Of a DNA stretch of 64,000 bases, positions 485 through 44,634 are shown in pieces (position 1 is the stretch's first letter; each line of letters begins with the position of its first letter). This DNA comes from Paragordius varius. Lineage: Eukaryota > Animalia > Nematomorpha. Where the stretch lies: NCBI GenBank assembly GCA_964247055.1, contig OZ176053.1, positions 1,674,001 to 1,738,000 on the forward strand, in the 5' to 3' direction. The translations under genes were made by a program, and so were the position numbers. The notes below the pieces were generated by a model. The model searched no databases, had not been told where the DNA came from, and saw only the letters and a list, made by a program, of their open reading frames with translations.

Positions 485-1804
485 TGATGGCTCTTGGGTC
501 TCGAACCAGGAAGATATAAGAAAATTGAGTATTTGGAACTAATATGATATAATGTATGGGGATAAATTTAGATATTATCCTTTAAATAAATATTTTTATT
601 AATAAAAAAGAGATTTTTCAAATATATGATATTTGGCTATTATGGGGAGATAAAACCGAAAAATAAATTTGAACGAAACTCAACATTATTTTGTAGAGCC
701 GCTTTAAGCCTGAAAAGCGATTTCGAATCGTTTTCACAACTGAAACCGAATTCTTAATGATTAGGCTTACTTTGGTTTTTTTGAAACATTAGCATACAAT
801 AATGTTTTATGGCTTTAAATATTAATATTTTGCAGCAATTTATTTACACTCCAGGACATATGTAAAATAAAAAAAATTTAACCAAAATTTGTACAATGAA
901 AAATAATGGAATTAGGACCATTTTTTCCCCGCGAAATAATAAAGCCAGAACAGATTGCAGCAGAAACACATTGTCACTAAATAGAACCGAGACCAAAAAC
1001 TAAAATATTAATATTCCTATATACTATTGGCATTATAAATTATCCCTGACCTTTAAAAGTCGTGTAAGACTGGGAATTTCGGATATTCACTTCGATTCAC
1101 CCTTAAACATTTAATTTAAGGTCGACAATTCGGAAAACAATAACTAATCGGTAAATTAGGGTTCAGGAGTAGTGTTGATCAAAGAATTTAATTTTTTTAT
1201 GCTATTTAAAAGGTTTATTAATTTTATAGGCGTTTTATTAAAGATATGTTGGTCCTATTATAAACTTTTAGCAGCGTGTTTTATGATAGATGTGACATTT
1301 TTTTATCATTTTTGCCATAACTTTTTTTGATTTGTAAAATAACTAAATAAATTTAACTTTCTGAAAATATTGAGAGGTAGGTTGATAGATGTCCGCGGAC
1401 AAACTTAAATATTTTTGTCGGATATTTGAGACACAGTTGTTAAAAAGTGTATTTTGTAATGAGTGAAAATTTCCTTTGTCAAACAATGCGGATTGGTACA
1501 ATTTAAGTAATTTTGTATGGTACGACTTCGGGGTAAGATAAAGTATTTGTAATTTAGGGCAAAATTAAGCCATCTTATGTCAGATAAATAATTGATGTCA
1601 CATTGAATTAGGACTTGCATGAATCCTATAATAAGTGTTTGTAAATGGGCTTTTAAGTAGGCTGCATCGATGTTCCCATCTATTTTATTGTGGTAAAAAT
1701 TGGTTGGTTCATGAATGTATATACTATCTATGTAAGTCAATTCAGCCAGTAGGGTTGTACCTCCTCGCATACATATATTATGATGGCGTTTTTACTTAAT
1801 GTTT
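485..1804 (-). pseudogene. Sulfotransferase copy S1 (pseudogene)
   Basis: Exon A spans about 1358-1804 (MRGGTTLL, YIHEP motifs) with a 4-nt deletion before the Met, a 6-nt deletion and a later frameshift. The exon B acceptor AG is mutated to AA (about 533), and exon B is cut off after LVRDPRA by the hAT end fragment. Confidence 0.85.
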
Positions 1805-4800
1805 CTAGTAAAAATAATTAAAGGGCTTTGATTACTGAAAAACATTACTAAATTAGAATTTAAACAAACTTATTTGCGCCTATATAACTTAATAATAAAA
1901 TTGAATTGTTTAAAATATAATATGAAATTTTCTGAAAAATACTTTTCTAATCAGACTTTCTAGGGCGTCGCAAAATGACAAAAGCAAGAATTTCGGCAAA
2001 AACGAATTTTCATAATTAGAGCAGCAAATTTGTAATGGCTCATGTAGACTTAATACTATCTGTGAAAATGGGGAAATCTATTAAACACTTTGCTCGATAT
2101 CTTAATTGTATGAGAAAAAAAAATAAAATACCAATACAAGTCATTTGAGTTTTCCTCCGATTAATCAAAATCAAAAAATCGCATTTTCCGCACATCGGTT
2201 CTCTAAGAATAGCCCGTATCCTTATTTTGACTTATAAAAGAAGAATTAAATTTAAACAAAAAATGGGGAAAAGCCTTTTTAACTACAATTAAATACTATA
2301 TACTATACATATTTAGCTTTATATAATAAACATTATTTGCATCAAAGCGAAAGTATCAAAAATACTTAACATTTTGGTGCCACTTAAGTTCCTTAGTTTT
2401 CGGTAATCGATAGAATAATTAAATAAATGTATTCATAGCTTAAAATATATATTATTTCTTATGTTAATAACGATAATCTAATAATATCATTATATATGAT
2501 TATTATGATATGAAAATAGAAATCAAAAAGAAAAATATGTGCGTATTCAAATGTAGAAAAAAGTGCGTTTTGAATTTAATTAATCACATTTCCACCATGC
2601 TTCAAAATACCATAAAGTAAGCTTAAAAACGTTTTGGCAAAACTAAATTTTTAGGCAGACTATGCATTTTATTTTTTTAATGTAATAATCTGGCATGTAT
2701 TAAAAATATTGCGTCTCGGAATTTTTGCGTTAATTAAAAAATATTAGCCCATTTTGGGTAATACAAATTTTGCGACTTTCGGAGTTGTGCTAATATTGCG
2801 ATTATAAAGCAATCATCTCAATAGTTCAATTAACTTTCTTAAATAACTTATAAGACGCAAAATTTAACAGTCTATGAGAATCCTAACAAATTTGTCTATC
2901 ATAAATTTTATGTTTTTAAGTTTTTTGTGTGCAGGTATTGTGCCTAATTTTTAAATTTTTGATAAGAAGTAGATAGTACAAAAGTGGAAATATTTTTAAA
3001 TGATCTTTATGGCATAAAACCAACACCATGGGATTCCGAATATATTTTTCTATCGGAATAAATATCATCAGAAAATATACATTTCATCAGAATTTTATGG
3101 ACACTGGGTAATTAGGATTTCAAATAGAAAAAAAATGATTATTAACTAGAATTTTTTAGCTCATGCACCGATTAATGATATCTAATTTTTTTCTTTGTTT
3201 TATTACGTAAATTAAGGATGTTAAATCCTTTTGAATAAATATTTTCCTATAATTTGTACATAAGAGTTAACACAAACCTTCAAAATAGATATAATACATC
3301 GCATTTATAAAATATATGAATTAAATTGACCTAGGGTCGCTAACAAAATTTGTATTAAAAACATAAATTTGAATGCAAAAATCCTTCATCAGTCTCTATT
3401 TAACAAAAACAGTCAAACATAACATAAATTTAATTAAATATTTTATATTCAGCACCCCCACTGTGCGCATATATAACCTTCCACCTCCATTACTTTCAGT
3501 GTACTAATTTTAATTTATCGACTGATATTGTCAGCCGAAAGCAATGGGATAGTTTATATGCCAGAGTTAAAATCTGTAAATACTGTTTCGACAGAAATTT
3601 TAGCTAAAATTTAATTAATAATTATTATTATATATTATATAAATAACCTTATAGTGTTTATAAAGTTTAGTGAATTCTGGATTCTAAAATTGGGACAGCT
3701 TTGAAAAACGATTGAAACGAACAGTCGATATTAAAATCAAAATATATTAAGTTTTCTGGTAAAAAGCCTGGAAACATTTTAAAGTTAATTATTAAATTTT
3801 CCAATCAAAATACACATTTTCATTAGCGATTTAAAAAAATTATAGATAAGGGCGGGAAAAAGTTTGAGATGAGTATATTTTACATTTTTTTAAATTTTTA
3901 AAAAGAATGCATATTTTTAAAATTCAGCTTAATAATTTATTTACTTTTTAAGATATTTAAATTTAAACTCTGATATAATTCTATTCCAAAAGGTCATTGA
4001 GTGTTAAATTTTATGGAATATAAATTTGGAAAAACAAGTAATAAAATTATCATGAGTTCAAATTTTACTTGTGAAAGCATATAATATACCACTGATAGAG
4101 AGCTAACTACAAGTAAAATTATCTTTATTTTTTACGCAACGACGGCATATCTAGAAATACAAAAAAATAAATATATATATATTTATATTTTTACTGCCAG
4201 ATGACTCGTTCTGTTCGCACTTAATTCGAGAATACCTAAATTATCACTTTATTCATACCGTACTGGGACTCCAGCCAAAAATGTGTAAATTTGTTCACGG
4301 TAAATGGGAATTCGTACGTCAATATTTTAAAAAATTTGCACGTACGTTTTTCGGCATATACAGTATCAGTAAAAATACATTGCAACATTAACTGTAAAGG
4401 TAAATATTATTGGCTAAAAGTTGGTTAACACAAAAATGCTGTTTCATCTTTTAGCCAAATAAAATGCTCTTTCCCGTAATTAAAAACTCGTAATGTATTA
4501 TTACTCAAACTATTTGTAACGTATGAATGTGTAGCTATTTCTCGTGATGTTGAGAACTTAAAAGCTGTGATGTTGATCCTGCGCATAAAATATCGTAATA
4601 ATTGATCATTTGGATTTTATTCTACCAAAAGAAACGAGAATGTTTACGTGTATAATTCAAACTGCAAGGTAAATATTATAATATTGATTTCAGGATTTAT
4701 ATAAATATTTGATTGAATTATAAATGTCGAAAAATGTTGTCCATGTGCATAATATTTACTATAACACAAACGTTGCTGCCAAAAAAAATAAAATGTTATG

Positions 4801-5445: not shown

Positions 5446-5446
5446 C

Positions 5447-5562: not shown

Positions 5563-7609
5563 TTATTTTTCTTCATCTAAACCGAAATCTCCACTATTTC
5601 CTGAAGAGGAAGATTCTGGATTTGGTGATCTGATTTCGCTAGCATTCAAATTCAATTCATGATTTTCATAGCCCCATATTATCAAATTACATATGGCAGC
5701 ATTCATATTTTGTAAATTTATCGTTTCACCATTGTATGCACAAGTACCAATCAGAGTTGGGCCAGTTTTAAGGCTTATATCACATAAAACATGGGAACAA
5801 CTTAAAGGGTTTCCTAAAATAACAACGAAATACAGTAAACATGAGATTATACAGAGAAAACGTAAAAAGGAAGACAGATGTTTTTTAAAAAAAATGACAT
5901 TTATATATTTCAAATATTAATTTTTTTATAAATAGCGTAGCATTTGAGGTTGTTAAATAAGGAATAGAGATGTAAATTGGTAATATACAGAATTATATAA
6001 TTAAAATAATTGAATAGTTTATGCAGTTAAACCAAGGTCTCTCTAAAAGTTTTTTTGTTTAAATAGATTTTGCTTTGAAAAAAAATGATATGTGTAATTT
6101 GGGCATCGCATATAAAAAAATATAAAACAGACCTGTTAAATCTATTTCCACACTGGGAATAGCGGTATGAGCAATAACTTTTGTAATATTATTATTACTT
6201 AAATCTATGGATTGAATACTTTTGAGTTTTGCAAAATCATTTAAATCTAAATAATTTATCCCATTTCCAGAAAGCCGAATTATTTGCAATGACGGACTTA
6301 GTCGTAAAGAAGATATATTACGAATCTGGTTGTAATTCAAATTAATTTCATTTATCTGGTTTAAATTGGAAACATCTAAAGTTACTAACTTATTTCCGGC
6401 TAATTCTAAGACCTCCAAATTTTTAAGTGTAGGCAAAGTGGTTAAATTTATTTCTCCAATATGATTATTATTTAAATACAATGTTTTTAATTTGGATAGT
6501 TTCTCAGTATTTTTAGCTAGAGGTGTATTAATGTACATAATATTATTGGAATCCAAATTTACGGTTTCTAAATTTTTGCAATCGCTTATTTCGTCCATAA
6601 AATTATCGTTTTTATCGCTTCCAATCATATTTCTTTTAAGACTTAAATATTTTAAATTTTTACTCTTGAAATTACAAATATTTTTCGGAAAGGAAAGTAG
6701 CATGTTATCGTCAAACGACAGGGATTCAATCTTAGGTGGAAGAAAGTTCAAATTTTTGATTTTTTGAAGATTAGTTCCAATATACAAGTCAGTTAGTTGG
6801 CTAAAGGCTTGAGGGAATACAAGCGATTCGTCGATATCCTTAATTTTCGGAGATAAAAATTGCAAACTCTCCAGGTTTGTACATGCTATTTTTTCCTTTA
6901 ACTCTTCCATCCCAAGCAAACTCAATACTCTGAGTCCTTTAAGGGCTTTATTTTTTAATACACCACGAGTTTGGGTAAGGAATGGCATTTTAATGTTCAA
7001 AAAACTTAACTGATTTAATGCATTAAACTTCCCCCAATCCAATCGATGTATGCGATCCAAATCTAACCGGAGTGTTTTTATGGGTAAATTTTTGATTTGA
7101 TTAGTCATTGCATAGACCATCGCTTCATCAATTTTAGCATTCAAATCGTAATCTGTAATTTCCAAGTGGTTTAAATAGCTTAATCTGCCAAACAAATTAG
7201 TGTTTTCGGCTAAATCAATCCATCTAACTTGAATTAGGGAAAGAGCGCTTATTCTGACCATATCATTCACCTGGATATTCTCAAAAGAAAGCTTTTTAAA
7301 TTTTGAGTTAGTAATGAATAAAGAAATATTGAGGATAGACTGATTACCGTCTCCGCCAGTAAAATTGGCAAAAATACTTTCTAGGTTTGAAAAATCAATA
7401 TCGTCCAAACCATTACATTTAACTGAAGTTGTGATAGCCAAAATGTTAGCTATAGGTTCTTTGAATGGTTCACACATGCATTTGGGAATAAAATTGTTCA
7501 AGGTAAAACATAATTTCTCTATCCCGCCAACTTTAAAAGCTGAAGTTTTAGCCGCCAAGGATAAGGAGCATAAAATTCCAATAATGATACAGATATATCT
7601 TGAAATCAT
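5563..7609 (-). CDS. Secreted LRR protein, copy L1 (intact, about 575 aa)
   Basis: Exon 1 is 7609-6133 (signal peptide MISRYICIIIGILCSLSLAA, LRRNT-like CMC..VKC, multiple LxxLxLxxN repeats). A phase-1 GT..AG intron is followed by exon 2 at 5813-5563. The splice restores IDLTG-NPLSCSHVLC (LRRCT-like, 4 Cys) and ends SSSSGNSGDFGLDEEK*. Confidence 0.88.
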
Positions 7610-11631: not shown

Positions 11632-13732
11632 TTATTTTTCTTCATCTAAACCGAAATCTCCACTATTTCCTGAAGAGGAAGATTCTGGATTTGGTGATCT
11701 GATTTCGCTAGCATTCAAATTCAATTCATGATTTTCATAGCCCCATATTATCGAATTACATATGGCAGCATTCATATTTTGTAAATTTATCGTTTCACCA
11801 TTGTATGCACAAGTACCAATTAAAGTTAGGCCAGTTTTAAGGCTTATATCACATAAAACACGGGAACAACTTAAAGGGTTTCCTAAAAAACAACAAAAAA
11901 TACAGTAAACATGAGATTATACAGACAAAACGCAAAAAGGAAGACAGATGTTTTTTTTTTAAAATGACAATTATATATTTCAAATATTAATATTTTTATA
12001 TATAACCACATTGGGTGTAAATAATAGAGACGCAAATTGGTAATACACTCAATTATATAAAATCAAAATTGTAATTTAATAGTTTATGTACTTACACCAA
12101 GGTTTAAAAATGTATCGTTGTCTATTTTAAAGAAAATATCTCTCTTAAAGTTTTTACCTTTTGTCTGTCTAATTTCAATTTTTACTGTATATTTTCCAAA
12201 ATTTTGCTTTGAAAAAAAATGATATGTGATATTTGGAATTGAATATGAAAAAACAGACCTGTTAAATCTATTTCCACACTGGGAACAACGGTAGACGCAA
12301 AAACTCTTGTTATATTATTATTAATTAAATCTATGGTTTGAATATTTTGCAGTTTTGCAAAATCATTTAAATCTAAAAAATTTATCGCCTTTCCGGCAAG
12401 CCGAATTATTTGCAATGACGGACTTAGGCGTAAAGACGATATATTACGAATCCGGTTGTAATCCAAATTGATTTCTTTAATCTGGTTCAAATTGGAAACA
12501 TCTAAAGTTACTAACTTATTTCCGGCTAATTCTAAGACCTCCAAATTTTTAAGTGTAGGCAAAGTGGTTAAATTTATTTCTCGAATATGATTATTATTTA
12601 AATACAATGATTTTAATTTGGGTAGTTTCTCAGTATTTTTAACTGGAGGTGTATTAATGTACGTAATACTATTGGAATCCAAATTTACGGTTTCTAAATT
12701 TTTGCAATCGCTTATTTCGTCTATAAAATTATCGTTTTTATCGCTTCCAATCATATTTCTTTCAAGGCTCAAATGTTTTAAATTTTTACTCTTTAAATTA
12801 CAAATATTTTTCGGGAAGGAAAGAAGCATGTTATCGTCAAACGACAGGGATTCAATCTTAGGTGGGAGAAAGTTCAAATTTTTGATTTTTTGAAGATTAG
12901 TTCCAATATACAAGTCAGTTAGTTGGCTAAAGGCTTGAGGGAATACATAGGACTCGTCGATATCCACAATTTTCGGAGATAGAAAATGCAAACTCTCCAG
13001 GTTTGTGCATTCTATTTTTTATAACTCCCTCAGCTCAAGCAAACTCAATAGTATGAGTTGTTTAAGAGATTTATTTTTTAATACACCACGAGTTTGGCTA
13101 AGGAATGGCATCTTAAAGTTCAAAAAACTTAACTGATTTAATGCATTAAACTTGCTCCAATCCAATCGGCGTATGCGATCCAAATCTAACCAAAGTGATT
13201 TTATGGGTAAATTTTTGATTTGATTAACAATCGCATAGACCATCGTTTCATTAACTTTAGCATTCAAATCGTAATCTGTAATTTCCAAGTGGTTTAAATA
13301 GCTTAATCTGCCAAAAAAATTAGTGTTTTTGGCTAAATCAATCCATCTAACTTGAATTAGGGAGAGAGCGCTTATTCTGACCATATCATTCACCTGGATA
13401 TTCTCAAAAGATAGCTTTGTAAATTTAGACTCAATAATAATAAGAGAAATATTGAGGATAGACTGATTACCCTCTCCGCCAGTAAAATTGGCAAAAATAC
13501 TTTCTAGGTTTGAAAAATCTATATCGTCCAAACTTATACATTTAACTGAGGTTTTGATAGCCAAAGGATTAGCTATGGGTTCTTTGAATGGTTCACACAT
13601 GCATTTGGGAATAAAATTATGTAAGGTAAAACATAATTTCTCTATCCCGCCATCTTTTAAAGCTGTGCCTTGAGCCATCAGGCATAAGGAGCATAAAACT
13701 CCAATAATGATACAGATATATCTTGAAGTCAT
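11632..13732 (-). pseudogene. LRR copy L2, premature stop (AAA>TAA at codon 238)
   Basis: Exon 1 is 13732-12259 and exon 2 is 11882-11632. ORFs 13019..13732 and 12182..12991 are in the same frame, separated by an in-frame TAA where paralogues have ELKKIEC. Confidence 0.85.
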
Positions 13733-15907: not shown

Positions 15908-17953
15908 TTATTTTTCTTCATCTAAACCGAAATCTCCACTATTTCCTGAAGAGGAAGATTCTGGATTTGGTGATCTGATTTCGCTAGCATTCGAATTCAA
16001 TTCATGATTTTCATAGCCCCATATTATCGAATTACATATGGCAGCATTCATATTTTGTAAATTTATCGTTTCACCATTGTATGCACAAGTACCAATCAGA
16101 GTTAGGTCAGTTTTAAGGCTTATATCACATAAAACATGGGAACAAATTAAAGGGTTTCCTAAATCAACAACAAAAAATAAAGTAAACATGAGATTATACA
16201 GACAAAAGGTAAAAAGAAACACAGGTGTTTAATGTTCATTTTTTTTAAATATAGCCTTATCATTTGAGGTTTTTAAATAAGAATAGAGATGTAAATTGGT
16301 AATACACTTAATTATATAAAATTTAAAATTATAGTTTATATAGTTAAACCTAGGTTTAAAATGTATCGTTGTCTATTTTAAAGAAAATATATCTCTTAAA
16401 GTTTTACGTTTTATCTGTATAACTTCAATTTTACTGTATATTTTATATGTGTTATTTGGAATTGAATATAAAAAAAAGAGACCTGTCAAATCTATTTCCA
16501 CACTGGGAACAGCGGTTTTCGCAATAACTCTTGTAATATTATTATTACTTAAATCTATGGATTGAATATTTTTGAGTTTTGCAAAATCATTTAAATCTAA
16601 ATAATTTATCCCATTTCTAGAAAGCCGAATTATTTGCAATGACGGACTTAGGCCTAAAGAAGATATATTACGAATCCGGTTGTAATCCAAATTAATTTCT
16701 TTGATCTGGTTTAAATTGGAAACATCTAAAGTTACGAATTTATTTCTGGATAATTCTAAGACCTCCAAATTTTTAAGTGTAGGCACAGTGGTTAAATTTA
16801 TTTCTCGAATATGATTATTATTTAAATACAATGATTTTAATTTGGATAGTTTCTCAGTATTTTTAACTGGAGGTGTATTAATGTATGTAATACTATTGGA
16901 ATCCAAATTTACGGTTTCTAAATTTTTACAATCGCTTATTTCGTCTATGAAATTATGGTTTTTATCGCTTCCAATCATATTTCTTTCAAGGCTTAAATAT
17001 TTTAAATTTTTATTGAAATTACAAATATTCTTCGGAAAGGAAATTAGCATGTTATCTTCAAACGACAGGGATTCAATCTTAGGTGGGAGAAAGTTCAAAT
17101 TTTTGATTTTTTGAAGATTAGTTCCAATACATAAGTCAGTTAGTTGGCTAAAAGCTTGAGGGAATACATAGGACTCGTCGATATTCACAATTTTCGGAGA
17201 TAGAAAATGCAAACTCTCCAGGTTTGTGCATTCTATTTTTTTTAACTCCCTCAGCTCAAGCATACTCAATAGTATGAGTTGTTTAAGAGCTTTATTTTTT
17301 AATACACCACGAGTTTGGCTAAGGAATGGCATCTTAAAGTTCAAAAAACTTAACTGATTAAACGCATTAATCCTGGCCCAATCCAATCGATGTATGTGAT
17401 CCAAATCTAACCAAAGTGATTTTATGGGTAAATTTTTGATTTGATTAACAATCGCATAAACCATCGTTTCATTAACTTTAGCATTCAAATCGTAATCTGT
17501 AATTTCCAAGTGGTTTAAATAGCTTAATCTGCCAAACAAATTAGTGTTTTTGGCTAAATCAATCCATCTAACTTGAATTAGGGAGAGAGCGCTTATTCTG
17601 ACCATATCATTCACCTGGATATTCTCAAAAGATAGCTTTGTAAATTTAGACTCAATAATAATAAGAGAAATATTGAGGATAGACTGATTACCCTCTCCGC
17701 CAGTAAAATTGGCAAAAATACTTTCTAGGTTTGAAAAATCTATATCGTCCAAACTTATACATTTAACTGAGGTTTTGATAGCCAAAGGATTAGCTATGGG
17801 TTCTTTGAATGGTTCACACATGCATTTGGGAATAAAATTATGTAAGGTAAAACATAATTTCTCTATCCCGCCATCTTTTAAAGCTGTGCCTTGAGCCATC
17901 AGGCATAAGGAGCATAAAACTCCAATAATGATACAGATATATCTTGAAGTCAT
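15908..17953 (-). CDS. Secreted LRR protein, copy L3 (intact, about 573 aa)
   Basis: Exon 1 is 17953-16483 and exon 2 is 16158-15908 (251 bp), with the same phase-1 intron. Open frame with signal peptide, LRRs and Cys caps. Confidence 0.88.
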
Positions 17954-26110: not shown

Positions 26111-28201
26111 TTATTTTTCTTGATCTAAACCGAAATCTCCACTATTTCCTGAAGAGGAAGATTCTGGATTTGGTGATCTGATTTCGCTAGCATTCAAATT
26201 CAATTCATGATTTTCATAGCCCCATATTATCGAATTACATATGGCAGGATTCATATTTTGTAAATTTATTGTTTCACCATTGTATGCACAAGTACCAATT
26301 AGAGTTAGGCCAGTTTTAAGGCTTATATCACATAAAACATGGGAACAACTTAAAGGGTTGCCTAAAAAACAACAAAAAATACAGTAAACATGAGATTATA
26401 CAGACAAAACGTAAAAAGGAAGACAGATGTTTTTTTCAAAAAAAGAAAATTATATATTTCAAATATTAATTTTTTTATATTGCGCCACATCATTTTGGGT
26501 GCCAAATAAGGGATAGACCAAATTATTCAAAATTCAAAATTGTAATTAAATAGTTTATGCATTTAAACAAGGTTTAAAAAGTATTGTTGTCTATTTTAAA
26601 GAAAATATCTTCTTAAAATTTTTCCGTTTTGTTCGTATAATTTCAATTTTTACTGTATATTTTTAAAAAATATTTTTTGTTTGAAAATATGATATGTGTA
26701 ATTTGGAATTGCATATAAAAAACAGACCTGTCAAATCTATTTCCACACTGGGAACAGCGGTATGCGCAATAACTGTTGTAATATTATTATTACTTAAATC
26801 TATGGTTTGGATATTTTTCAGTTTTGTAAAATCATTCAAATCTAAATAATTTATCGCATTTCCGGCGAGCCGAATTATTTGCAATGATGTACTTAGGCCT
26901 AAAGAAGATATATTACGAATCCGGTTGTAATCCAAATTAATTTCTTTTATCTGGTTTAAATTGGAAACATCTAAAGTTACGAATTTATTTCTGGATAATT
27001 CTAAGACCTCCAAATTTTTAAGTGTAGGCAAAGTGGTTAAATTTATTTCTCGAATATGATTATTATTTAAATACAATGATTTTAATTTGGATAGTTTCTC
27101 AGTATTTTTAACTGGAGGTATATTAATGTACGTAATACTATTGGAATCCAAATTTACGGTTTCTAAATTTTTACAATCGCTTATTTCGTCTATGAAATTA
27201 TGGTTTTTATCGCTTCCAATCATATTTCTTTCAAGGCTCAAATGTTTTAAATTTTTACTCTTTAAATTACAAATATTTTTCGGGAAGGAAAGAAGCATGT
27301 TATCGTCAAACGACAGGGATTCAATCTTAGGTGGGAGAAAGTTCAAATTTTTGATTTTTTGAAGATTAGTTCCAATACATAAGTCAGTTAGTTGGCTAAA
27401 GGCTTGAAGGAATACATAGGACTCGTCGATATCCACAATTTTCGGAGATAGAAAATGCAAACTCTCCAGGTTTGTGCATTCTATTTTTTTTAACTCCCTC
27501 AGCTCAAGCAAACTCAATAGTATGAGTTGTTTAAGAGCTTTATTTTTTAATACACCACGAGTTTGGCTAAGGAATGGCATCTTAAAGTTCAAAAAACTTA
27601 ACTGATTTAATGCATTAAACTTGCTCCAATCCAATCGGCGTATGCGATCCAAATCTAACCAAAGTGATTTTATGGGTAAATTTTTGATTTGATTAACAAT
27701 CGCATAGACCATCGTTTCATTAACTTTAGCATTCAAATCGTAATCTGTAATTTCCAAGTGGTTTAAATAGCTTAATCTGCCAAACAAATTAGTGTTTTTG
27801 GCTAAATCAATCCATCTAACTTGAATTAGGGAGAGAGCGCTTATTCTGACCATATCATTCACCTGGATATTCTCAAAAGATAGCTTTGTAAATTTAGACT
27901 CAATGATAATTAGAGAAATATTGAGGATAGACTGAATACCCTCTCCGCCAGTATAATTGGCAAAAATACTTTCAAGGTTTGAAAAATCAATATCGTCCAA
28001 ACCATTACATTTAACTGAAGTTTTGATAGCCAAAGGATTAGCTATGGGTTCTTTGAATGGTTCACACATGCATTTGGGAATAAAATTATGTAAGGTAAAA
28101 CATAATTTCTCTATTCCGCCATCTTTTAAAGCTGAAGTTGTAGCCGCCAAGCATAAGGAGCACAAAACTCCAATAATAATACAGATATATCTTGAAGTCA
28201 T
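26111..28201 (-). CDS. Secreted LRR protein, copy L4 (intact, about 574 aa)
   Basis: Exon 1 is 28201-26728 and exon 2 is 26361-26111. Open spliced frame ending ...GLDQEK*. Confidence 0.88.
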
Positions 28202-30535: not shown

Positions 30536-32351
30536 TCATTTATTATATTGTAGATATTGTAATACGTTGTCACATTTTTTGTTGATGTAAGAAATTTCCC
30601 TGGGCTTGAGCCTAATTTTCCAATCATGTAAATGTTCGGTGGGATTTTTACGATAAGTATTAAAACTTTCTTCAATCATTGCGTTGTGGGACCAAGTCGA
30701 TTTTATCAACCTTGGATTAGCGTTATAATTATTATTATATTGCTGATGACCATAAATAACCAATTTTGAATTTAAACTGTTTGATGGCAAATTCAAAAAT
30801 GTTAAAATTTTTGCCATAATAAGTGTATCTTGTGTCACCAAGTCTTCATATTTTACAAGTTTAATAATATTTTTATGCGATAATAACTTATACGTATTGA
30901 GATCATTGGACATGGTAGAACATAATTTCTTAACCATAGTCTGAAATGGATTTATAGTATTCCAATGTAATTTAATGCGGCTTGATATAATCGCTCTTGG
31001 GTCTCGAACCAGGAAGACATAAGAAAATTGAGTATCTCGAACTAATATGATATAATGTTTTGGGATAAATTAGATATTATCCTTTAAATAAATATTTTTT
31101 AATAAAAAAAGATTTTTTAAATATATGAGATTTGGCTTTTAGGGAAAGCTAAAACTAAAAAGGAGTTATATCTGTTTTTATAAAATTGAACAAAACTCAA
31201 AAATTTTGTAGAACCGCTTTAAGCCTAAAAAGACGATTTCGAACCGTTTTCAAAACTGGTACCGCGGTCATAATCATTGAGCATACATTAGATTTTTTTC
31301 GAAATATTAGCAGACAATAATGATTTATGCCTTAAATATTAATATTTTAAATATTTTGTAGCATCACACTCCAGGATATGTGTAAATTATAAATATTTCA
31401 ACCAAAATTAGTACCATATAACGAAAAACCATGGAATTAGGACCAATTTATCCCCGCAAAGTATTAAAAGTCAGAACAAATTGCCGCAGAAATATTTTAT
31501 GACTAAATCGAACCGGAACTGAAAACTAAAATATTCACCTCCCTATATACTGTTTGACATTAAAAATCCAGACTTTTAAAAGTTACCGTGTAGGACTAGT
31601 TGTTTCGGAATTTACTTAAATTCACCCTTAATTAATTGAAGGTCAACAATGCGGAAAAAAATAACTAATCGGTAAATTAGGGTCAGGAATAGTGTTGATC
31701 GAAGAATTTAATTTTTATGCTCGGAAGGTTTATTATTTTCTAACCTGGTTTTTTATTGATATGTTGGGATATCCTATTATAAAATTTTTACCAGCATGTG
31801 TTATAATAAATGTGACTTTTTTATTACTTTTGCCATAACTTTTTTTAATTTATAAAATAAAGTACATAAATAAGGCTAATTAAATTAAACTTTCAGAAGA
31901 TATTGAGAGGTAGGTTGATAGAGGTCCGCGGACAAACTTAAATATTTTTGTCGGGTATTTGAGACACAGTTGTTGAAAAGTGTATTTTGTCATGAGGGAA
32001 AATTTGTCCCTTGTCAAACAATGCGGATTGGTACAATTTAAGTAATTTTGTATGGTACGACTTCGAGGTAAGATAAAGTATTTGTAATTTAGGGCAAAAT
32101 TAAGCCATCTTATGTCAGATAAGTAATTGATGTCACATTGAATAAGGGCTTGCATGAGTCCTATTATAAGTGTTTGTAAATGGGCTTTTAGGTAGGCAGC
32201 ATCGATGTTCCCATCTATTTTATTGTGGTAAAAATTGGTTGGTTCATGAATGTATATACTATCTAAGTAAGTGTCCAACTTTTTAGCCAGAAGTGTTGTA
32301 CCTCCGCGCAATATCCATATATTATGATGGCGTTTTTTCTCTTCGATGTTT
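30536..32351 (-). pseudogene. Sulfotransferase copy S2 (probable pseudogene)
   Basis: Exon A (32351-31891) is 461 nt against 462 in S4, with a 1-nt deletion at the Met of YMRGGTT. Exon B (31035-30536) is open (LVRDPRAIISSR, KYEDL). The upstream putative first-exon region is deleted (about 1.1 kb missing at about 32600). Confidence 0.8.
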
Positions 32352-32651
32352 CTAAGAAAAACATAAAATAAATTATGGGCGTTAAATACAGAAAAACATT
32401 TCTAAATTATGATTTAAACAAACTTATTTGCGCGTATATATATTAATAATAATTGATCAATTGTTTAATATAAATATATATATTAAATTTTCCTGAAAAA
32501 TACTCTTTTAATGAGACTTTCTAGGACGTCGCAAAATGACAAAAGCAAGAATTTTGGCTAAAACAAATTGTCATAATTAGAGGAGCAAAAATTTAATGGC
32601 AGTGATCTTTAATTTTTTTTTGTTTTATAACGTAAAGTAAGGAATGTCAAG

Positions 32652-35285: not shown

Positions 35286-37381
35286 TTATTTTTCTTCATC
35301 TAAACCGAAATCTCCACTATTTCCTGAAGAGGAAGATTCTGGATTTGGTGATCTGGTTTCGCTAGCATTCAATTTCAATTCATGATTTTCATAGCCCCAT
35401 ATTATTGAATTACATATGGCAGCATTCATTTTTTGTAAATTTATCGTTTCACCATTGTATGCACAAGTACCAATCAGAGTTAGACCAGTTTTAAGGCTTA
35501 TATCACATAAAACATGGGAACAACTTAAAGGGTTTCCTAAAATAACAACAAAAAATACACTAAACATGAAATTATATAGTCATAACATAATAAGGAAGAC
35601 AGATGTTTTTTTTAAAAAAGACAATTATATATTTTAAATATTTATTTTTTAATAAATAGCCTTATCATTTAAGTTGCTAAATAAAGGATAGACTAAAATA
35701 TACAAAATTTAAAATTGTAATTAAATAGTTTATGCAGTTAAACAAGGTTTAAAAAGTATCGTTGTCTATTTTAAAGAAAATATCTCCTCAAAATTTTTAC
35801 GTTTTGTTTGTATAATTTTAATTTTTACTGTATATTTTAAATATAAATTTTGCTTTGAACAAAATGAGATGTGTTATTTGGGCATCGCATATAAAAAATA
35901 TCAAATAGAGACCTGTTAAATCTATTTCTACACTGGGAATAGCGGTAGGCGCAAAAACTCTTGTAATATTATTATTACTTAAATCTATGGTTTGGATATT
36001 TTTCAGTATTTCAAAATCATTTAAATCTAAATAATTTATCGAATTTCCAGAGAGCCGAATTATTTGCAATGATGGACTTAGTCGTAAAGAAGATATATTA
36101 CGAATCTGGTTGTAATTCAAATTAATTTCATTTATCTGGTTCAAATTGGAAACATCTAAAGTTACCAACTTATTTCTGGATAATTCTAAGATCTCCAAAT
36201 TTTTAAGTGTAGGCAAAGTGGTTAAATTTATTTCTCCAATATGATTATTATTTAAATACAATGTTTTCAATTTGGATAGTGCATCAGCATTTTTAGCTAG
36301 AGTTGTGTTAATGTACGTAATACTATTGGAATCCAAATTTACGGTTTCTAAATTTTTGCAATCGCTTATTTCGCTATAAAGTTATCGTTTTTATCGCTTC
36401 CAATCATATTTCTTTCAAGGCTTAAATGTTTTAAATTTTTACTGTTTAAATTACAAATATTCTTCGGAAAGGAAATTAGCATGTTATCTTCAAACGACAG
36501 GGAATCAATCTTAGGTGGGAGAAAGTTCAAATTTTTGAATTTTTGAAGATTAGTTCCAATATACAAGTCAGTTAGTTGGCTAAAGGCTTGAGGGAATACA
36601 TAGGACTCGTCGATATCCACAATTTTCGAAGATAGAAAATGCAAACTCTCCAGGTTTGTGCATTCTATTTTTTTTAACTCCCTCAGCTCAAGCAAACTCA
36701 ATAGTATGAGTTGTTTAAGAGCTTTATTTTTTAATACACCACGAGTTTGGCTAAGGAATGGCATCTTAAAGTTCAAAAAACTTAACTGATTTAACGCATT
36801 AAACCTGGCCCAATCCAATCGATGTATGTGATCCAAATCTAACCAAAGTGATTTTATGGGTAAATTTTTGATTTGATTAACAATCGCATAGACCATCGTT
36901 TCATTAACTTTAGCATTCAAATCGTAATCTGTAATTTCCAGTGGTTTAAATAGCTTAATCTGCCAAACAAATTAGTGTTTTTCGCATCAATCCATCTAAC
37001 TTGAATTAGGGAGAGAGCGCTTATTCTGACCATATCATTCGCCTCGATATTCTCAAAAGATAGTTTTGTAAATTTAGACTCAATAATAATTAGAGAAATA
37101 TTAAGGATAGACTGATTACCGTCTCCGCCAGTATAATTGGCAAAAATACTTTCTAGGTTTGAAAAATCAATATCGTCCAAACCATTACATTTAACTGAAG
37201 TTTTGATAGCCAAAATGTTAGCTATGGGTTCTTTGAATGGTTCACACATGCATTTGGGAATAAAATTGTTCAAGGTAAAACATAATTTCTCTATCCCGCC
37301 ATCTTTTAAAGCTGTGCCTTGAGCCGTCAGGGATAAGGAGTACAAAACTCCAATAATAATACAGATATATCTTGAAGTCAT
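35286..37381 (-). pseudogene. LRR copy L5, two frameshifts
   Basis: Exon 1 (37381-35913) has 1-nt deletions at about 36941 and 36372. Exon 2 (35536-35286) is intact. Confidence 0.82.
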
Positions 37382-40080: not shown

Positions 40081-40226
40081 TTACAAATCGATATTTTATG
40101 TGTTTAATTATTTTAAAATGTATTACACCTGTTTATGACGTTTGACTCCCATTTTTATGGATAGCCTATTGAATGACGGCATTTTTAAAGTAAAATAATT
40201 AAAAATCTATTTATTGTAAAAAGAGA

Positions 40227-41999
40227 TCATTTATTATATTGTAGATATTGTAATACGCTGCCACATTTTTTGTTGATGTAAGAAATTTCCCTGGGCTTGA
40301 GCTTAATTTTCCAATCATGAAAATGTTCGGTGGGATTTTTACGATAAGTATTAAAACTTTCTTCAATCTAGGACCAAGTCGATTTTATTAACCTTGGATT
40401 ATCATAATTATTATATTGCTGATGACCATAAACAACTAATTTTGGATTTAAACTGGTTGATGGCAAATTCAAAAATGTCAAAATTTTTGCCATAGTAAGT
40501 GTATCTTGTGTCACCAAGTCTTCATATTTTACAAGTTTAATAATATTTTTATGCGATAATAACTTATACGTATTGAGATCATTGGACATGCTAGAACACA
40601 ATTTCTTAACCATAGTCTGAAACGGATTTATAGTATTCCAATGTAATTTAATGCGACTTGATATGATGGCCCTAGGGTCTCGAACCAGGAAGACATAAGA
40701 AAATTGAGTATCTGGAACTAATATGATATAATGTATAGGGATAAATTTATATATTATCCTTTAAATAAATATTTTTAATAATAAAAAAAGATTTTTTTTA
40801 ATATATGATATTTGGCTTTTATGGGGAGATAAAACTAAAAAAGAGTTATATCTGTTTTTATAAAATTGAACCAAACTCAACATTTTTCTGTAGAACCGCT
40901 TTCCTGAAAAGACGATTTCAAACCGTTTTCAAAATTGACTGCGGCCCGAATTCTAGATCATCAAGCATACTTTAGATTTTTTCGAAATATTAGCATACAT
41001 GTTTTATGCCTTAAATAGTATTATTTTGTAGCAATTTATTCACACTCCAGGATATGTGTAAAATAAATTTTTTTATCAAAAATAGTATCATTAAACAAAA
41101 AACAATGGAATTAGGACCACTTTATCTCCGCAAAATATTAAAAATCAGAACGAATTGCAGCAAAAACATTTTATTGCCACTAAATAGAACCGGAACCAAA
41201 AACGAAATTATTTACCTCCGTATATACTATTGACATTATGAATCATCCCTGAAGTTACCGTGTAAGACTTGGAATATTCGGAATTCACTTAAATTCACTC
41301 TTAAATAATTTAAGGTCGACAATTCAAAAAATAAAATGGTAAATTAGGGTTGGAGTAGTGTTGATCAAAGAATAATTTAATTTTTTATGCTATTTATAAG
41401 GGTTATTAATTTTCTATACTTGGTTATTAAAGATATGTTGGTATATCTTATTGTAATTTTATGTGACTTTTTTTTATCACTTTTGCCATAACTTTTTTTG
41501 ATTTATAAAAGAAACTACATAAATAATGCTAATTAAATTAAACTTTCAGAAGATATTGACAGGTAGGTTGAAAGAGGTCCGCGGACAAACTTAAATATTT
41601 TTGTCGGATATTTGAGACACAGTTGTTGAAAAATGTATTTTGTTATGAGCGAAAATTTGTTCTTTGTCAAACAATTCGGATTGGTACAAAGTAATTTTGT
41701 ATGGTACGACTTCGAGGTAAGATAAAGTATTTGTAATTTAGGGCAAAACTAAGCCATCTTAGTCCGATAAATAATTGATGTCACATTGAATCAGGGCTTG
41801 CATGAGTCCTAAAATAAGTGTTTGTAAATGGGCTTTTAAGTAGACAGCATCGATGTTCCCATCTATTTTATTGTGGTAAAAATTGGCTGGTTCATGAATG
41901 TATATACCATCTAAGTAAGTGTCCAGCTTTTTAGCCAGCAGTGTTGTACCTCCTCGCATATATCCATATATTACGATGGCGTTTTATTCTTCGATGTTT
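40227..41999 (-). pseudogene. Sulfotransferase copy S3 (pseudogene)
   Basis: Exon A (41999-41544) has several 1-4 nt deletions. Exon B (40711-40227) has a net 9-nt deletion creating TAG after KSTWS. Confidence 0.88.
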
Positions 42000-44634
42000 C
42001 TAGTAAAAATAATTATAGAGCTTTGATTACTGAAAAACATTTCTAAATTATAATTTAAACAAACTTATTTGCGCGTATATAAATTAATAATAATTGATCA
42101 ATAGTTTAATATATAATATATATATATATATATATATTTTCCTGAAAAATACTCTTTTAATGAGACTTTCTAGGGCGTCGCAAAATGACAAAAGCAAGAA
42201 TTTTGGCAAAAACAAATTGTCATAATTAGAGGAGCAAAAATTTAATGGCTCATTTTGACTTATTACTGTCTGCGAAAATGGGGAAATCTATTAAACACTT
42301 TGCTCGATATCTTAGTAAGAGAAAAAGAATAAAATACCAATACAAGTCATTTGAGTATTTCTCCGATTAATCAAAATCAAAAAATCGCATTTTCCGCACA
42401 TCAGTACTAAGAATAGGTTTCCCCCGTATCCTTATTTTGTCTTATAAAAGAAGAATTAAATTTAAACAAAAAAATGGGGAAAAGCCTTTTTAACTACAAT
42501 TAAATACTATATACTATACATATTTAGCTTTATATAATAAACATTATTTGCATCAAAGCGAAAGTATCAAAAATAGTTAACATTTTGGTGCCACTTAAGT
42601 TCCTTAGTTTTCGGTAATAAGTCGATAGAATAATTTAAATAAATGTTTACATAGCTTAAAATAAATAATAATTTTTATGTCAACTAACGATAATCTAATA
42701 ATTTTTAATATATGTTTATGATATGAAAATAGAAATCAAAAAGAAAAATATGTGCGTATTCAAATGTAGAAAAAAGTGCGTTTTGAATTAAATTAATCAC
42801 ATTTCCACCATGCTTCAAAATACCATGAAGTAAGTTTAAAAACGTTTTTGCAAAACTAAATTTTTAGGCAGACTATGCATTTTATTTTTTTGATGTAATA
42901 ATCTGGCATGTATTAAAAATATTGCGTCTCGGAATTTTTGCGTTAATTTAAAAATATTAGCCCATTTTGGGTAATACAAATTTTGTGACTTTCGGAGTTG
43001 TGCTAATATTGCGATTATAAAGCAATCATCTCAATAGCTCAATTAACTTTCTTAAATAACTTATAAGACGCAAAATTTAACAGTCTATGAGAATCCTAAC
43101 AAATTTGTCTATCATAAATTTTATGTTTTTAAGTTTTTTGTGTGCAATCTGTATTGTGCCTATTTAATTTTTTGATAAGAAGTAGATAGTACAAAAGTGG
43201 AAATATTTTTAAATGATCTTTATGGCATAAAACCAACACCATGGGAATCCGAATATATTTTTCTATCGGAATAAATATCGTCAAAATAAATACATTTCAT
43301 CAAAATTTTTACTGGCACTGGGTAATTAGGATTTAAAATAGGAAAAAATGATTAGTAGCTCTAATTTTTTAGCTCATGCACCGATTAGTGATTTCTAATT
43401 TTTTTCTTTATTTTATAACGTAAAGTAAGGAATGTCAAGTACTTTTGAATAAAATTTTTCTTATATTTTAAATAAGAGTTATATTGCGCAATATTGAAAA
43501 TGGATTCAATACATCGCATAATTTATAAAATATTATTTAAACTGACTAGGTCGCTAACATTTGTATTGAAGACTGTTTATGAGTCTCACTGTAACAAAAA
43601 TATCAATCATAACAAAAATTTAATTAAATTTTTTATATTCAGCACCCCTTAACTGGCACTTTGCGGGTGTATAAACCGCCTCCGCCTACCTTACTTTCCA
43701 GTCTAGTTTTATATTTGTCTAAACCAGCCTGATATTACCAGCCAAAATTTGTTTGGTGTTGAACCAGGATATTAAAGAATATATATTACTATTTTTTGGT
43801 GCGACAATATTTTTTAAAATTATTTATACATCGCAAATTCGTTATTAACGCTTCATGACTTTTGATTTTTTTGCCCCAATATAAATATTGGATAGTTTAT
43901 ATGCCAGAGTTGATCAAATAAACTATTTTGAAAAAATTTAGCTAGAACTTAATTATCAAAAATTATTATCATGTATTAGACAAAAAAAGTATATAGTTGT
44001 TTTTTCACAGTTTTATGACTTCTAGAGTCTAAAATTCGGATCTTTGAAAAACAATTATAACGGCCAATTTTTAAATCAAAATATATTAAGTTTGCTCGGC
44101 AAATATAGCCTGAAAACTTTTTAAAGTTAATTATTAAAATTTTCCCATCATAATACACGTTATTAGCCATTTAAAAAATTTATAGATAAGGGCGGCAAAA
44201 AGTTTGAGATTTTCTTGGTCATGCTCATGCCCCTTTGAAATAAAGACTTTACAATAAAAGTCGAAAATTAAAATTTATATTTTTATCATATACGCATTTT
44301 AGCTTTAAATAAATTTCATAATATATAATGCGTAATTCTCTCAATTTTGCTACGAAATGTATTACTCAAACTATTTGTAACAATGTAAATGTGTGGTTTT
44401 CTTTTGTCTTGAGGTTGAGAACTTAAAAGCTAATGTGATGTTGATACCAGGCGCATAAATTATTGTAATTATTGATCATATTTAAATTTTTATACTATTT
44501 ACCAAAAGAAACGAGAATGTTTACGTGTATAATTTAACAAATTACTATGTAAATATTGTAATTTCGATTTTTGAAACCATATAATTAAAACATAAATGTC
44601 GAAAAAATTGTTTGTCCATTTTATGCATTTTAAT

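What the first reader, a model, noticed from the sequence alone, without database searches (positions are those of the whole stretch)
5563..5650. LRR C-terminal tail looks like a glycosaminoglycan attachment site: possible enzyme-substrate pair
Seen: all seven copies end in nearly invariant NASEIRSPNPESSSSGNSGDFGLDEEK (ETRS in L5, DQEK in L4), i.e. two Ser-Gly dipeptides flanked by acidic residues and a Phe. The solenoid also carries many N-glycosylation sequons (NFT/NYT, NQS, NIS, NLT, NIT, NAS). Known: SG with neighbouring acidic and hydrophobic residues is the xylosylation context for chondroitin/heparan sulfate chains. Small leucine-rich proteoglycans carry GAG on SG (decorin, biglycan) or keratan sulfate on N-glycans (lumican), and these chains are sulfated by CHST-family 6-O-sulfotransferases. 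Inference: the neighbouring enzyme may sulfate this LRR proteoglycan, giving a self-contained sulfated-proteoglycan cassette.
Basis: partly seen in the sequence, partly recalled or inferred. Interest (0 to 1): 0.75.

Follow-up and report, generated by a model that had tools for sequence, protein, structure and literature searches.

The report
Conserved acidic tail on hairworm LRR proteins
Seven tandem copies of a secreted leucine-rich-repeat gene in an AT-rich animal genome (probably a horsehair worm) do end in the same 27-residue acidic Ser/Gly tail, but the sequence only permits a sugar-chain (proteoglycan) attachment site, and nothing beyond adjacency ties it to the neighbouring sulfotransferase genes.

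Summary
All seven minus-strand LRR genes end in NASEIRSPNPESSSSGNSGDFGLDEEK-stop, with ETRS in L5 and DQEK in L4. This tail is the least variable 81-nt stretch of the coding sequence: 2 of 81 columns vary, against 15% in exon 1 and 23 of 60 just after the stop.

Silent sites are frozen too, and three of the seven copies are pseudogenes. Recent duplication or gene conversion therefore explains part of the invariance.

- The two Ser-Gly sites fit only the loose rule (SG plus nearby acidic residues), which occurs 2.9 times per 1000 residues in unrelated LRR proteins.
- They fail the stringent nematode motif E/D-G/A-S-G.
- N-glycosylation sequons (7 observed, 9.1 in shuffles) and SG dipeptides (3 observed, 2.2 in shuffles) are not enriched.
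- The protein is not a small leucine-rich proteoglycan by its cysteine caps or repeat number.

The neighbouring enzyme does fit the carbohydrate 6-O-sulfotransferase family (PF00685, exact RDPRxxxxSR motif). Published work reports that this family expands lineage-specifically in several invertebrates. Of the five copies here, two are pseudogenes, and no signal-anchor exon was found.

No RNA data and no orthologues were obtainable. My verdict is a real, conserved, probably disordered acidic tail. GAG attachment is possible (about 15%). A dedicated enzyme-substrate cassette is unlikely (about 5-7%).

The parts
5566..5646 (-). L1 C-terminal tail, 27 codons: NASEIRSPNPESSSSGNSGDFGLDEEK. SG sites at residues 563 and 566 of the 575-aa product. 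Stop codon at 5563-5565.
   Evidence: Least variable 81-nt coding window among the 7 copies. No secondary structure in the AF2 model of exon 2, which has low confidence.
5647..5813 (-). L1 exon 2, C-terminal cap of the LRR solenoid, with four Cys (residues 498, 503, 517, 534).
   Evidence: No Pfam LRRCT hit even at E<=10.
5814..6132 (-). L1 intron, 319 nt, GT..AG, phase 1. It holds a high-copy repeat around 5968-6041.
   Evidence: DNA contigs of runs X1 and X3 cross it unspliced, and depth peaks in 5968-6041.
6133..7609 (-). L1 exon 1: signal peptide (about residues 1-19), 4-Cys N-cap (C34, C44, C46, C65), then an LRR solenoid of roughly 18 repeats by length (regular LRRs from about residue 290).
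   Evidence: (LRR_8 1.1e-13). The AF2 model is low-confidence; Foldseek returns generic LRR solenoids.
11632..13732 (-). L2, with an in-frame premature stop at 13019-13021. Tail at 11635-11715, identical to L1.
15908..17953 (-). L3, intact. Tail at 15911-15991, identical.
26111..28201 (-). L4, intact. Tail at 26114-26194 ends DQEK (one nonsynonymous change).
35286..37381 (-). L5, with two frameshifts in exon 1 (near 36923-36941 and 36372-36378). Tail at 35289-35369 reads ETRS (one nonsynonymous change).
45668..47747 (-). L6, with one frameshift near 46908. Tail at 45671-45751, identical.
56514..58614 (-). L7, intact. Tail at 56517-56597, identical.
30539..32401 (-). S2 sulfotransferase, two catalytic exons, both open. 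The exon-A reading frame is 32401-31883 and carries RGGTTL (5'PSB variant). The exon-B reading frame is 31069-30539 and carries RDPRAIISSR (3'PB) and KYEDLV. No N-terminal signal-anchor exon was identified.
   Evidence: (PF00685 2.4e-9)
50972..52744 (-). S3 sulfotransferase, both catalytic exons open.
40194..42249 (-). Exon A is frameshifted and exon B has a stop, so it is a pseudogene.
487..2039 (-). S1 sulfotransferase remnant. Exon A has a stop and frameshifts, and exon B is truncated after about 27 codons, so it is a pseudogene.
63411..64000 (-). S4 sulfotransferase. Exon B is open; the rest lies beyond the window end.

Best explanation
The 27 residues are the genuine translated C-terminus of a lineage-specific family of secreted LRR glycoproteins. 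The architecture is a signal peptide, a 4-Cys N-cap, a solenoid of roughly 18 LRRs, a 4-Cys C-cap, and then the tail.

Shown:
- The tail is hydrophilic (mean Kyte-Doolittle -1.37) with net charge -4.
- It is rich in Ser, Gly, Pro and Asn.
- It follows the last structural cysteine and has no hydrophobic stretch, so it is neither a GPI signal nor a membrane anchor.
- It is the most conserved part of the gene across seven tandem paralogues, while the solenoid diverges (dS 0.09-0.16, dN/dS 0.3-0.5).

Inferred:
- It is a flexible, exposed 'constant' acidic appendage behind a more variable binding solenoid.
- It most likely serves as a common handle for some secretory-pathway modification of its Ser cluster (O-glycan, phosphate or xylose) or for docking to a basic partner or matrix.
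- Its invariance comes partly from purifying selection and partly from recent duplication or gene conversion, because silent sites and pseudogene copies are frozen too.
- The carbohydrate 6-O-sulfotransferase genes are neighbours carried along in a roughly 10-kb L-S segmental duplication, not demonstrated partners.
For: - Gene model and open 575-aa product with a signal peptide, no other hydrophobic segment, and an acidic hydrophilic tail.
- Seven copies with only two tail changes.
- Tail is the least variable coding window (2/81 against 14.9%, P=2.4e-4), with a sharp rise in variation right after the stop.
- Exon 1 dN/dS is 0.32-0.53.
- 0 of 27 third positions vary in the tail against 18.5% in exon 1 (P=0.004); 0 synonymous differences in 21 pairs.
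- L2, L5 and L6 are disabled yet keep the tail.
- The tail has no secondary structure in the AF2 model.
- The L-to-S intergenic DNA is homologous between cassettes (for example 93.6% over 3.5 kb between L1 and L7 downstream regions), so the duplication unit includes both genes.
- Lineage-specific expansions of the 6-O-sulfotransferase family are reported in lancelet (16 sequences), acorn worm (31) and sea urchin (30): PMC7353957.
Against: - No transcript evidence. The only runs that hold the locus are DNA, so splicing, the 3' end and expression are inferred from sequence alone.
- No orthologue outside this genome was found, so constraint is measured only among recent paralogues with a short shared tree.
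- Frozen silent sites fit gene conversion as well as selection, so a protein-level function of the tail is not proven.
- The statement leaves the actual modification open.
Confidence: 0.55

Rival explanations
1. First reader's reading, part 1. The tail is a glycosaminoglycan attachment site. A peptide O-xylosyltransferase xylosylates Ser563 and/or Ser566, and a chondroitin or heparan chain is built there. The family would then be lineage-specific LRR proteoglycans.
For: - Two SG dipeptides lie within 4 residues, with E at -4 of the first, D at +2 of the second, and DEE downstream, on a signal-peptide-bearing protein.
- This meets the loose criterion used to nominate C. elegans chondroitin proteoglycans.
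- It is within human XT1 tolerance.
- Proteoglycan cores are typically lineage-specific.
- Drosophila Windpipe is an LRR chondroitin sulfate proteoglycan.
- The tail is conserved and predicted unstructured.
Against: - It fails the 'highly stringent' nematode motif E/D-G/A-S-G. The contexts here are S-S-S-G and G-N-S-G.
- The loose motif occurs 2.9 times per 1000 aa in unrelated LRR proteins, and 18 of 173 such proteins have two sites within 10 aa.
- The cited review itself warns that motifs alone are ambiguous.
- There are no acidic residues at -2 or -3 of either serine.
- SG count is not enriched in the protein.
Confidence: 0.15
2. First reader's reading, part 2. The adjacent 6-O-sulfotransferase specifically sulfates glycans carried by this LRR protein, and the two genes are co-amplified as a functional enzyme-substrate cassette.
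For: - L and S alternate on the same strand, and the intergenic DNA is co-duplicated.
- S has PF00685, an exact RDPRxxxxSR 3'PB motif and an RxG(S/T)(S/T)-type 5'PSB motif. It therefore fits the family that sulfates chondroitin sulfate, keratan sulfate and related glycans.
Against: - Adjacency is the only link, and co-duplication of neighbours is the null expectation for a segmental duplication.
- The ratio is uneven. There are 7 L to 5 S, with L3-L2-L1 in a row without S. 3 L and 2 S copies are disabled without matching partners.
- No signal-anchor exon was found for S. The frame just upstream of the 5'PSB motif differs between S2 and S3, so Golgi localisation is unverified.
- The family expands in other invertebrates.
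- This reading also requires part 1, or a sulfated N- or O-glycan, to be true.
Confidence: 0.06
3. The invariance is purely historical. Recent duplication plus gene conversion of the 3' exon homogenised exon 2, and the tail is an unconstrained low-complexity extension with no specific role.
For: - Silent sites are as frozen as replacement sites: 0 synonymous differences, while both observed changes are nonsynonymous.
- Pseudogenes L2 and L6 have identical tails.
- The rest of exon 2 is also less diverged than exon 1 (pS 0.065 against dS 0.09-0.16).
- In the DNA runs, one collapsed contig covers exon 2 at about 6x the depth of an L1-specific contig.
Against: - Conservation stops abruptly at the stop codon (1 variable column in 5620-5561, then 23 in 5560-5501). 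A conversion tract has no reason to respect that boundary in all seven copies.
- The intron immediately upstream is far more diverged (17%).
- The tail differs significantly even from the adjacent cap-coding part of exon 2 (P=0.012).
Confidence: 0.2
4. The constraint is on the nucleic acid, not the peptide. The last 80 nt of the ORF would act as an RNA element (localisation, stability or small-RNA target).
For: All 27 third-codon positions are invariant.
Against: - No RNA structure signal: MFE z-score is -0.23.
- No antisense ORF is shared by all the copies.
- No supporting data of any kind.
Confidence: 0.04

Closest known systems
Small leucine-rich proteoglycans (decorin, biglycan, lumican)
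   Same: Secreted LRR solenoid with cysteine caps. SG dipeptides in an acidic context lie outside the solenoid.
   Different: - SLRP features below are from established knowledge.
- SLRPs have about 12 LRRs or fewer; this protein has about 18 by length.
- The SLRP N-terminal cluster is Cx2-3CxCx6-9C; here it is C-x9-C-x-C-x18-C.
- SLRPs end in a 2-Cys 'ear' cap; here the C-cap has 4 Cys.
- Decorin and biglycan carry their GAG at the N-terminus, not on a C-terminal tail.
- No sequence homologue was found, and no SLRP appears among the top 50 fold matches.
- It is not a member.
Drosophila Windpipe (LRR chondroitin sulfate proteoglycan)
   Same: An ecdysozoan LRR protein, without SLRP-type Cys clusters, that carries CS on SG serines in the extracellular domain (PMC7185963).
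   Different: - Windpipe is a single-pass membrane protein with four LRRs; this family has about 18 LRRs and no transmembrane segment.
- No detectable homology.
- Windpipe's CS chains were shown by glycoproteomics; here nothing has been shown.
C. elegans chondroitin proteoglycans (CPG-1 to -9 and later additions)
   Same: Lineage-specific secreted cores nominated by a signal peptide plus SG with nearby acidic residues.
   Different: - Mapped nematode sites follow E/D-G/A-S-G, which the tail lacks.
- Several CPGs carry many SG sites; this tail has two.
- No LRRs are mentioned among the CPG domains quoted in the passages read.
Carbohydrate 6-O-sulfotransferase family (CHST1-7 / C6OST), for the neighbouring gene
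   Same: PF00685 domain (2.4e-9), exact 3'PB motif RDPRxxxxSR (RDPRAIISSR), and a 5'PSB-type loop R-x-G-(S/T)-(S/T). Lineage-specific expansion is reported for this family in several invertebrates.
   Different: - The 5'PSB reads RGGTTL, not RxGSSF.
- No signal-anchor exon was found.
- No named homologue was retrieved; the length-limited searches were blank or weak.
- The acceptor sugar is unknown.
Generic extracellular LRR ectodomains (Toll/TLR, LGR, Slit-type) with LRRNT/LRRCT caps
   Same: Signal peptide, 4-Cys caps on both ends, and a long solenoid. Fold matches are TLR13, LGR5, LRRC8 and internalins.
   Different: - No TM, TIR or other downstream domain.
- The caps are too divergent for Pfam LRRNT or LRRCT.
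- The N-terminal 240 residues have no detectable relatives.

Membership tests
Small leucine-rich proteoglycans (SLRP classes I-III) | N-terminal cysteine cluster Cx2-3CxCx6-9C | tested here: not met
   Cys at 34, 44, 46 and 65 give C-x9-C-x-C-x18-C. No Pfam LRRNT hit at E<=10. The SLRP pattern itself is from established knowledge.
Small leucine-rich proteoglycans (SLRP classes I-III) | Short solenoid of about 12 LRRs or fewer, with a C-terminal 2-Cys 'ear' capping motif | tested here: not met
   About 450 residues lie between the caps, which is about 18 repeats by length. The C-cap has four Cys at 498, 503, 517 and 534.
Small leucine-rich proteoglycans (SLRP classes I-III) | Sequence homology to decorin, lumican or similar | tested here: not met
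   Only generic LRR hits came back in 5.8 billion and 1.84 billion-protein searches, confined to residues 245-488. No SLRP among the top 50 Foldseek PDB hits, though the model is low-confidence.
Proteoglycan core (GAG-bearing protein) | Entry into the secretory pathway | tested here: met
   N-terminal hydrophobic signal segment (KD19 2.03), with no other hydrophobic segment (maximum 0.92).
Proteoglycan core (GAG-bearing protein) | Loose acceptor context: Ser-Gly with one or more acidic residues within about 8 residues | tested here: met
   S563 and S566 both qualify. The criterion is from PMC2063922. The context is common: 2.9 per 1000 aa in control LRR proteins.
Proteoglycan core (GAG-bearing protein) | Stringent nematode attachment motif E/D-G/A-S-G | tested here: not met
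   No match anywhere in the 575-aa protein. The motif is from PMC8418075.
Proteoglycan core (GAG-bearing protein) | A GAG chain actually attached (linkage tetrasaccharide on Ser) | not testable with these tools
   Needs lyase digestion or glycoproteomics. The cited review stresses that motifs alone are ambiguous.
Carbohydrate 6-O-sulfotransferases (C6OST, CHST1-7) - neighbouring gene | Sulfotransfer_1 domain PF00685 | tested here: met
   Exon B scores 37.4 bits, E=2.4e-9, against a cut-off of 22.
Carbohydrate 6-O-sulfotransferases (C6OST, CHST1-7) - neighbouring gene | 3'PB motif RDPRxxxxSR | tested here: met
   RDPRAIISSR is present in S2, S3, S4 and Sx. The motif definition is from PMC7353957.
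Carbohydrate 6-O-sulfotransferases (C6OST, CHST1-7) - neighbouring gene | 5'PSB motif RxGSSF | tested here: inconclusive
   It reads RGGTTL. R and G are kept, SS is replaced by TT and F by L, a conservative variant.
Carbohydrate 6-O-sulfotransferases (C6OST, CHST1-7) - neighbouring gene | Type II Golgi topology (N-terminal signal anchor) | tested here: inconclusive
   No convincing upstream exon was found. The frame upstream of the 5'PSB motif differs between S2 and S3.
Carbohydrate 6-O-sulfotransferases (C6OST, CHST1-7) - neighbouring gene | Phylogenetic placement among named C6OSTs | not tested
   The spliced protein cannot be passed to the tools by reference. Exon-wise searches were blank or weak because of the length limits.

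The most novel reading that the evidence does not exclude
A horsehair-worm-specific family of secreted LRR proteins carries a chondroitin or heparan chain on a constant C-terminal SG tail, and is sulfated by a dedicated 6-O-sulfotransferase encoded in the same tandemly amplified cassette. This would be an animal example of a genomically linked proteoglycan core and tailoring enzyme.
Probability: 0.05. Interest if true: 0.65.

Novelty: new member of a known kind. Interest (0 to 1): 0.25.

Why it matters
If the tail really carried a GAG chain, this would be a new invertebrate LRR proteoglycan class. Together with the adjacent sulfotransferase it would be a rare case of an animal enzyme-substrate gene cluster.

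On present evidence it is something more modest: a lineage-specific secreted LRR family whose short acidic tail is its most conserved part. That makes the tail a sensible target for mass spectrometry. Its C-terminal tryptic peptide is 21 residues long. But it gives no reason to expect a proteoglycan.

The case also shows how unspecific the 'SG plus acidic residues' rule is.

Tried and rejected
- **Orthologue search for exon 1.** The word-indexed search of 5.8 billion proteins and the full HMMER scan of 1.84 billion representatives returned only generic LRR matches, confined to residues 245-488. There were no orthologues, so tail conservation across species could not be tested.
- **Search with exon 2 (cap plus tail).** No candidate at all.
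- **RNA evidence.** The only runs that hold the locus behave as DNA: their contigs cross the intron unspliced. The putative RNA runs of the same species label hold none of its words. Splicing and expression are therefore untested. Runs X5 and X6, from other organism labels, carry near-identical sequence and add no evolutionary depth.
- **Sulfotransferase subfamily by homology.** The PDB sequence search gave only chance hits and a second call failed on frame. The ESM Atlas gave only 'Sulfotransfer_1' clusters. The search for homologous proteins gave one weak hit because of its length window. Classification therefore rests on Pfam plus published motifs.
- **GPI anchor or transmembrane reading of the tail.** Rejected. 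There is no hydrophobic C-terminus.
- **A hidden third exon.** Downstream regions are homologous only as whole duplicated segments, and the stop codon is invariant. This is not excluded without RNA.
- **RNA structure in the tail.** z=-0.23, rejected.
- **Keratan-sulfate-on-N-glycan idea.** Sequons are not enriched.
- **Structure models.** Exon 2 (pLDDT 56) and exon 1 (pLDDT 54) are low-confidence. I used them only for 'LRR solenoid' and 'tail unstructured'.
- **Signal-anchor exon of the sulfotransferase.** Not found.
Full report
**What is in the window.** The window is AT-rich (28% GC) eukaryotic DNA with transposon debris. Earlier notes of this scan on other parts of the same genome call it an ecdysozoan, probably a horsehair worm related to Gordionus. 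I did not test that.

Seven paralogous genes (L1-L7) lie on the minus strand. A 41-nt core of the reported tail occurs seven times without a mismatch, against 0 expected.

**Gene model.** For L1, exon 1 runs from the ATG at 7609 to 6133. A GT..AG phase-1 intron of 319 nt follows (6132-5814). Exon 2 runs 5813-5563 and ends in TAA. The spliced ORF is 575 codons with no internal stop. The product has these features:
- an N-terminal signal-type hydrophobic segment and no other hydrophobic stretch;
- four Cys at 34, 44, 46 and 65, forming an N-cap;
- a long LRR region (Pfam LRR_8, 1.1e-13);
- four Cys at 498, 503, 517 and 534 in exon 2, forming a C-cap;
- then the 27-residue tail.

**Observation check.** All seven terminal exons translate to ...NASEIRSPNPESSSSGNSGDFGLDEEK*.

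The tail is more conserved than its surroundings.

| Region | Variable columns or divergence |
|---|---|
| Tail | 2 of 81 columns |
| Exon 1 | 220 of 1476 columns (14.9%) |
| Cap-coding part of exon 2 | 17 of 168 columns |
| Intron | about 17% pairwise divergence |
| 60 nt after the stop | 23 of 60 columns |

The tail is the minimum of all 81-nt coding windows. The statistics are binomial P=2.4e-4 against exon 1, P=0.012 against the rest of exon 2, and Fisher P=2e-8 against the 3' flank.

L1 and L7 sit in segments whose non-coding DNA is 93.6% identical over 3.5 kb, yet their tails are identical (P about 0.005).

**Caveats on that conservation.**
- The silent sites are frozen as well. 0 of 27 third positions vary, against 18.5% in exon 1 (P=0.004). 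There are no synonymous differences in 21 pairs, and both observed changes are nonsynonymous.
- Three copies are disabled yet keep the tail. L2 has an in-frame stop at 13019-13021, L5 has two frameshifts, and L6 has one near 46908.
- In DNA runs of the same species label, one collapsed contig covers exon 2 at about six times the depth of an L1-specific contig. This fits about seven near-identical exon 2 copies and nothing more diverged.

Part of the invariance must therefore be recent duplication or gene conversion rather than selection on the peptide. Against a purely historical explanation, conservation ends sharply at the stop codon in all copies.

An RNA-structure explanation finds no support (z=-0.23).

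Exon 1 evolves under relaxed purifying selection (dS 0.09-0.16, dN/dS 0.32-0.53).

**Is it a GAG attachment site?**

For:
- The protein is secretory, and the tail is hydrophilic, net -4 and unstructured in a low-confidence model.
- It holds two SG dipeptides, at S563 and S566, with E at -4, D at +2 and DEE downstream.
- That satisfies the loose rule used to nominate C. elegans chondroitin proteoglycans: Ser-Gly plus one or more acidic residues, usually within eight residues (PMC2063922).
- Human XT1 is 'surprisingly unspecific'. It needs Ser at 0 and a small residue at +1, tolerates uncharged residues at -1, and has only a general acidic preference (PMC5992326).
- Proteoglycan cores evolve independently in different lineages.
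- Drosophila Windpipe shows that an ecdysozoan LRR protein can be a chondroitin sulfate proteoglycan (PMC7185963).

Against:
- In C. elegans, the nearest phylum with mapped sites, the motif is 'highly stringent' E/D-G/A-S-G (PMC8418075). The tail reads S-S-S-G and G-N-S-G, and the motif occurs nowhere in the protein.
- The loose motif is common. In 173 unrelated LRR proteins (273,452 residues) it occurs 2.9 times per 1000 residues, and 18 of the 173 proteins have two such sites within 10 residues. The stringent motif occurs 0.06 times per 1000 residues.
- SG dipeptides are not enriched in L1 (3 against 2.2 expected). N-glycosylation sequons, at 7, are if anything fewer than the 9.1 expected from composition. 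The 'many sequons / keratan sulfate' argument therefore falls.
- The same review warns that motifs alone are an ambiguous way to identify proteoglycans.

I put GAG attachment at about 15%.

**Is it an SLRP?** No.
- The N-terminal Cys spacing is C-x9-C-x-C-x18-C. This is not the Cx2-3CxCx6-9C cluster of SLRPs (a pattern from established knowledge).
- The C-cap has four Cys, not the two of the SLRP 'ear' cap.
- The solenoid is about 18 repeats long by length.
- No Pfam LRRNT or LRRCT model matches, even at E<=10.
- Sequence searches find only generic LRR similarity, restricted to residues 245-488.
- The low-confidence fold (pLDDT 54) matches TLR13, LRRC8, LGR5 and internalins, not decorin-type proteins.
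- Decorin and biglycan carry their GAG at the N-terminus (established knowledge).

The family is lineage-specific, or at least absent from the databases searched.

**The neighbouring enzyme.** The sulfotransferase has two recognisable catalytic exons. Exon B hits PF00685 at 2.4e-9 and contains RDPRAIISSR. This is an exact match to the 3'PB motif RDPRxxxxSR that, together with RxGSSF and PF00685, is used to define carbohydrate 6-O-sulfotransferases (PMC7353957). The 5'PSB motif reads RGGTTL, a conservative variant.

There are five copies, not four:
- S1 (487-2039) is a pseudogene;
- S2 and S3 are open in both exons;
- S4 is cut by the window end.

I could not find a signal-anchor exon, and the reading frame just upstream of the 5'PSB motif differs between S2 and S3. 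Golgi topology is therefore unverified.

**The linkage.** Read along the minus strand, the order is S4 L7 S3 L6 Sx L5 S2 L4 (transposon) L3 L2 (retroelement) L1 S1. The L-to-S intergenic DNA is homologous between units, so a cassette of about 10 kb holding both genes was the duplication unit. Co-duplication of neighbours is what any segmental duplication produces. The copy numbers and the pattern of pseudogenes do not pair up. The 6-O-sulfotransferase family is reported to expand lineage-specifically in lancelet (16 sequences), acorn worm (31) and sea urchin (30). Adjacency is the only evidence for an enzyme-substrate relationship, and I rate that at about 5-7%.

**Best reading.** The tail is a real, translated, probably disordered acidic Ser/Gly/Pro/Asn appendage. 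It sits behind the C-cap of a lineage-specific secreted LRR family and is kept constant while the solenoid diverges. It most likely acts as a shared exposed handle, either for some secretory-pathway modification of its Ser cluster (xylose/GAG, another O-glycan, or phosphate) or for electrostatic docking. Part of its invariance is owed to recent duplication or conversion.

- Shown: the sequence, the gene model, the conservation statistics, the motif tests and the enzyme family.
- Inferred: disorder, exposure and modification.
- Not obtainable here: transcripts, orthologues and any biochemistry.

**Limits.** There is no RNA support for the splice or for expression. The paralogues share a short tree, so the statistics treat sites as independent on few substitutions. 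Spliced proteins could not be submitted to the search or fold tools.

Noticed in passing
Exon A is frameshifted and exon B has a stop. With it, the array reads as alternating L-S cassettes of about 10 kb.
   Followed up: yes
window 8471-9894, arms 8628-8802 and 9320-9494: A retroelement remnant (integrase core, Pfam rve 3.2e-13) lies between L1 and L2. It carries a 175-nt inverted duplication, 99% complementary, with arms 517 nt apart, so the same peptide is encoded on both strands.
   Followed up: partly
window 19947-22631 (+) and 59818-60114 (+): Fragmented plus-strand ORFs with CxxC...H...H-type motifs, possibly remnants of a DNA transposon (a guess from the peptide sequences). They sit between L3 and L4 where an S copy would be expected, and again between S4 and L7. 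The two fragments scanned against Pfam gave no hit.
   Followed up: no
window 5968-6041 (L1 intron): Contig depth in the species' DNA runs jumps to about 8450, against about 200 for an L1-specific contig, and many loose ends start here. A high-copy short repeat appears to be inserted in the intron.
   Followed up: no
window 5440-5485 and equivalent sites downstream of other L copies: A (TA)n microsatellite lies about 80-120 nt downstream of the stop codon. A conserved ATGGGATGGTG block lies about 60 nt downstream of the stop in all seven copies and is possibly 3'-UTR sequence.
   Followed up: no
window 32330-32401 vs 52744-52800: The reading frame immediately upstream of the sulfotransferase 5'PSB loop differs between S2 (..HHNIWILRGGTT) and S3 (..ILIYEYMRGGTT). 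In S1, Sx and S3 an ATG directly precedes RGGTT. The true 5' end of the enzyme is unresolved.
   Followed up: partly
L1 residue 276 vs L3/L4/L7: L3, L4 and L7 have a Cys where L1 has Tyr (DLCIGT vs DLYIGT). Outside the signal peptide (Cys 7 and 14 excluded), L1 therefore has 11 Cys, an odd number, against 12 in the others.
   Followed up: no
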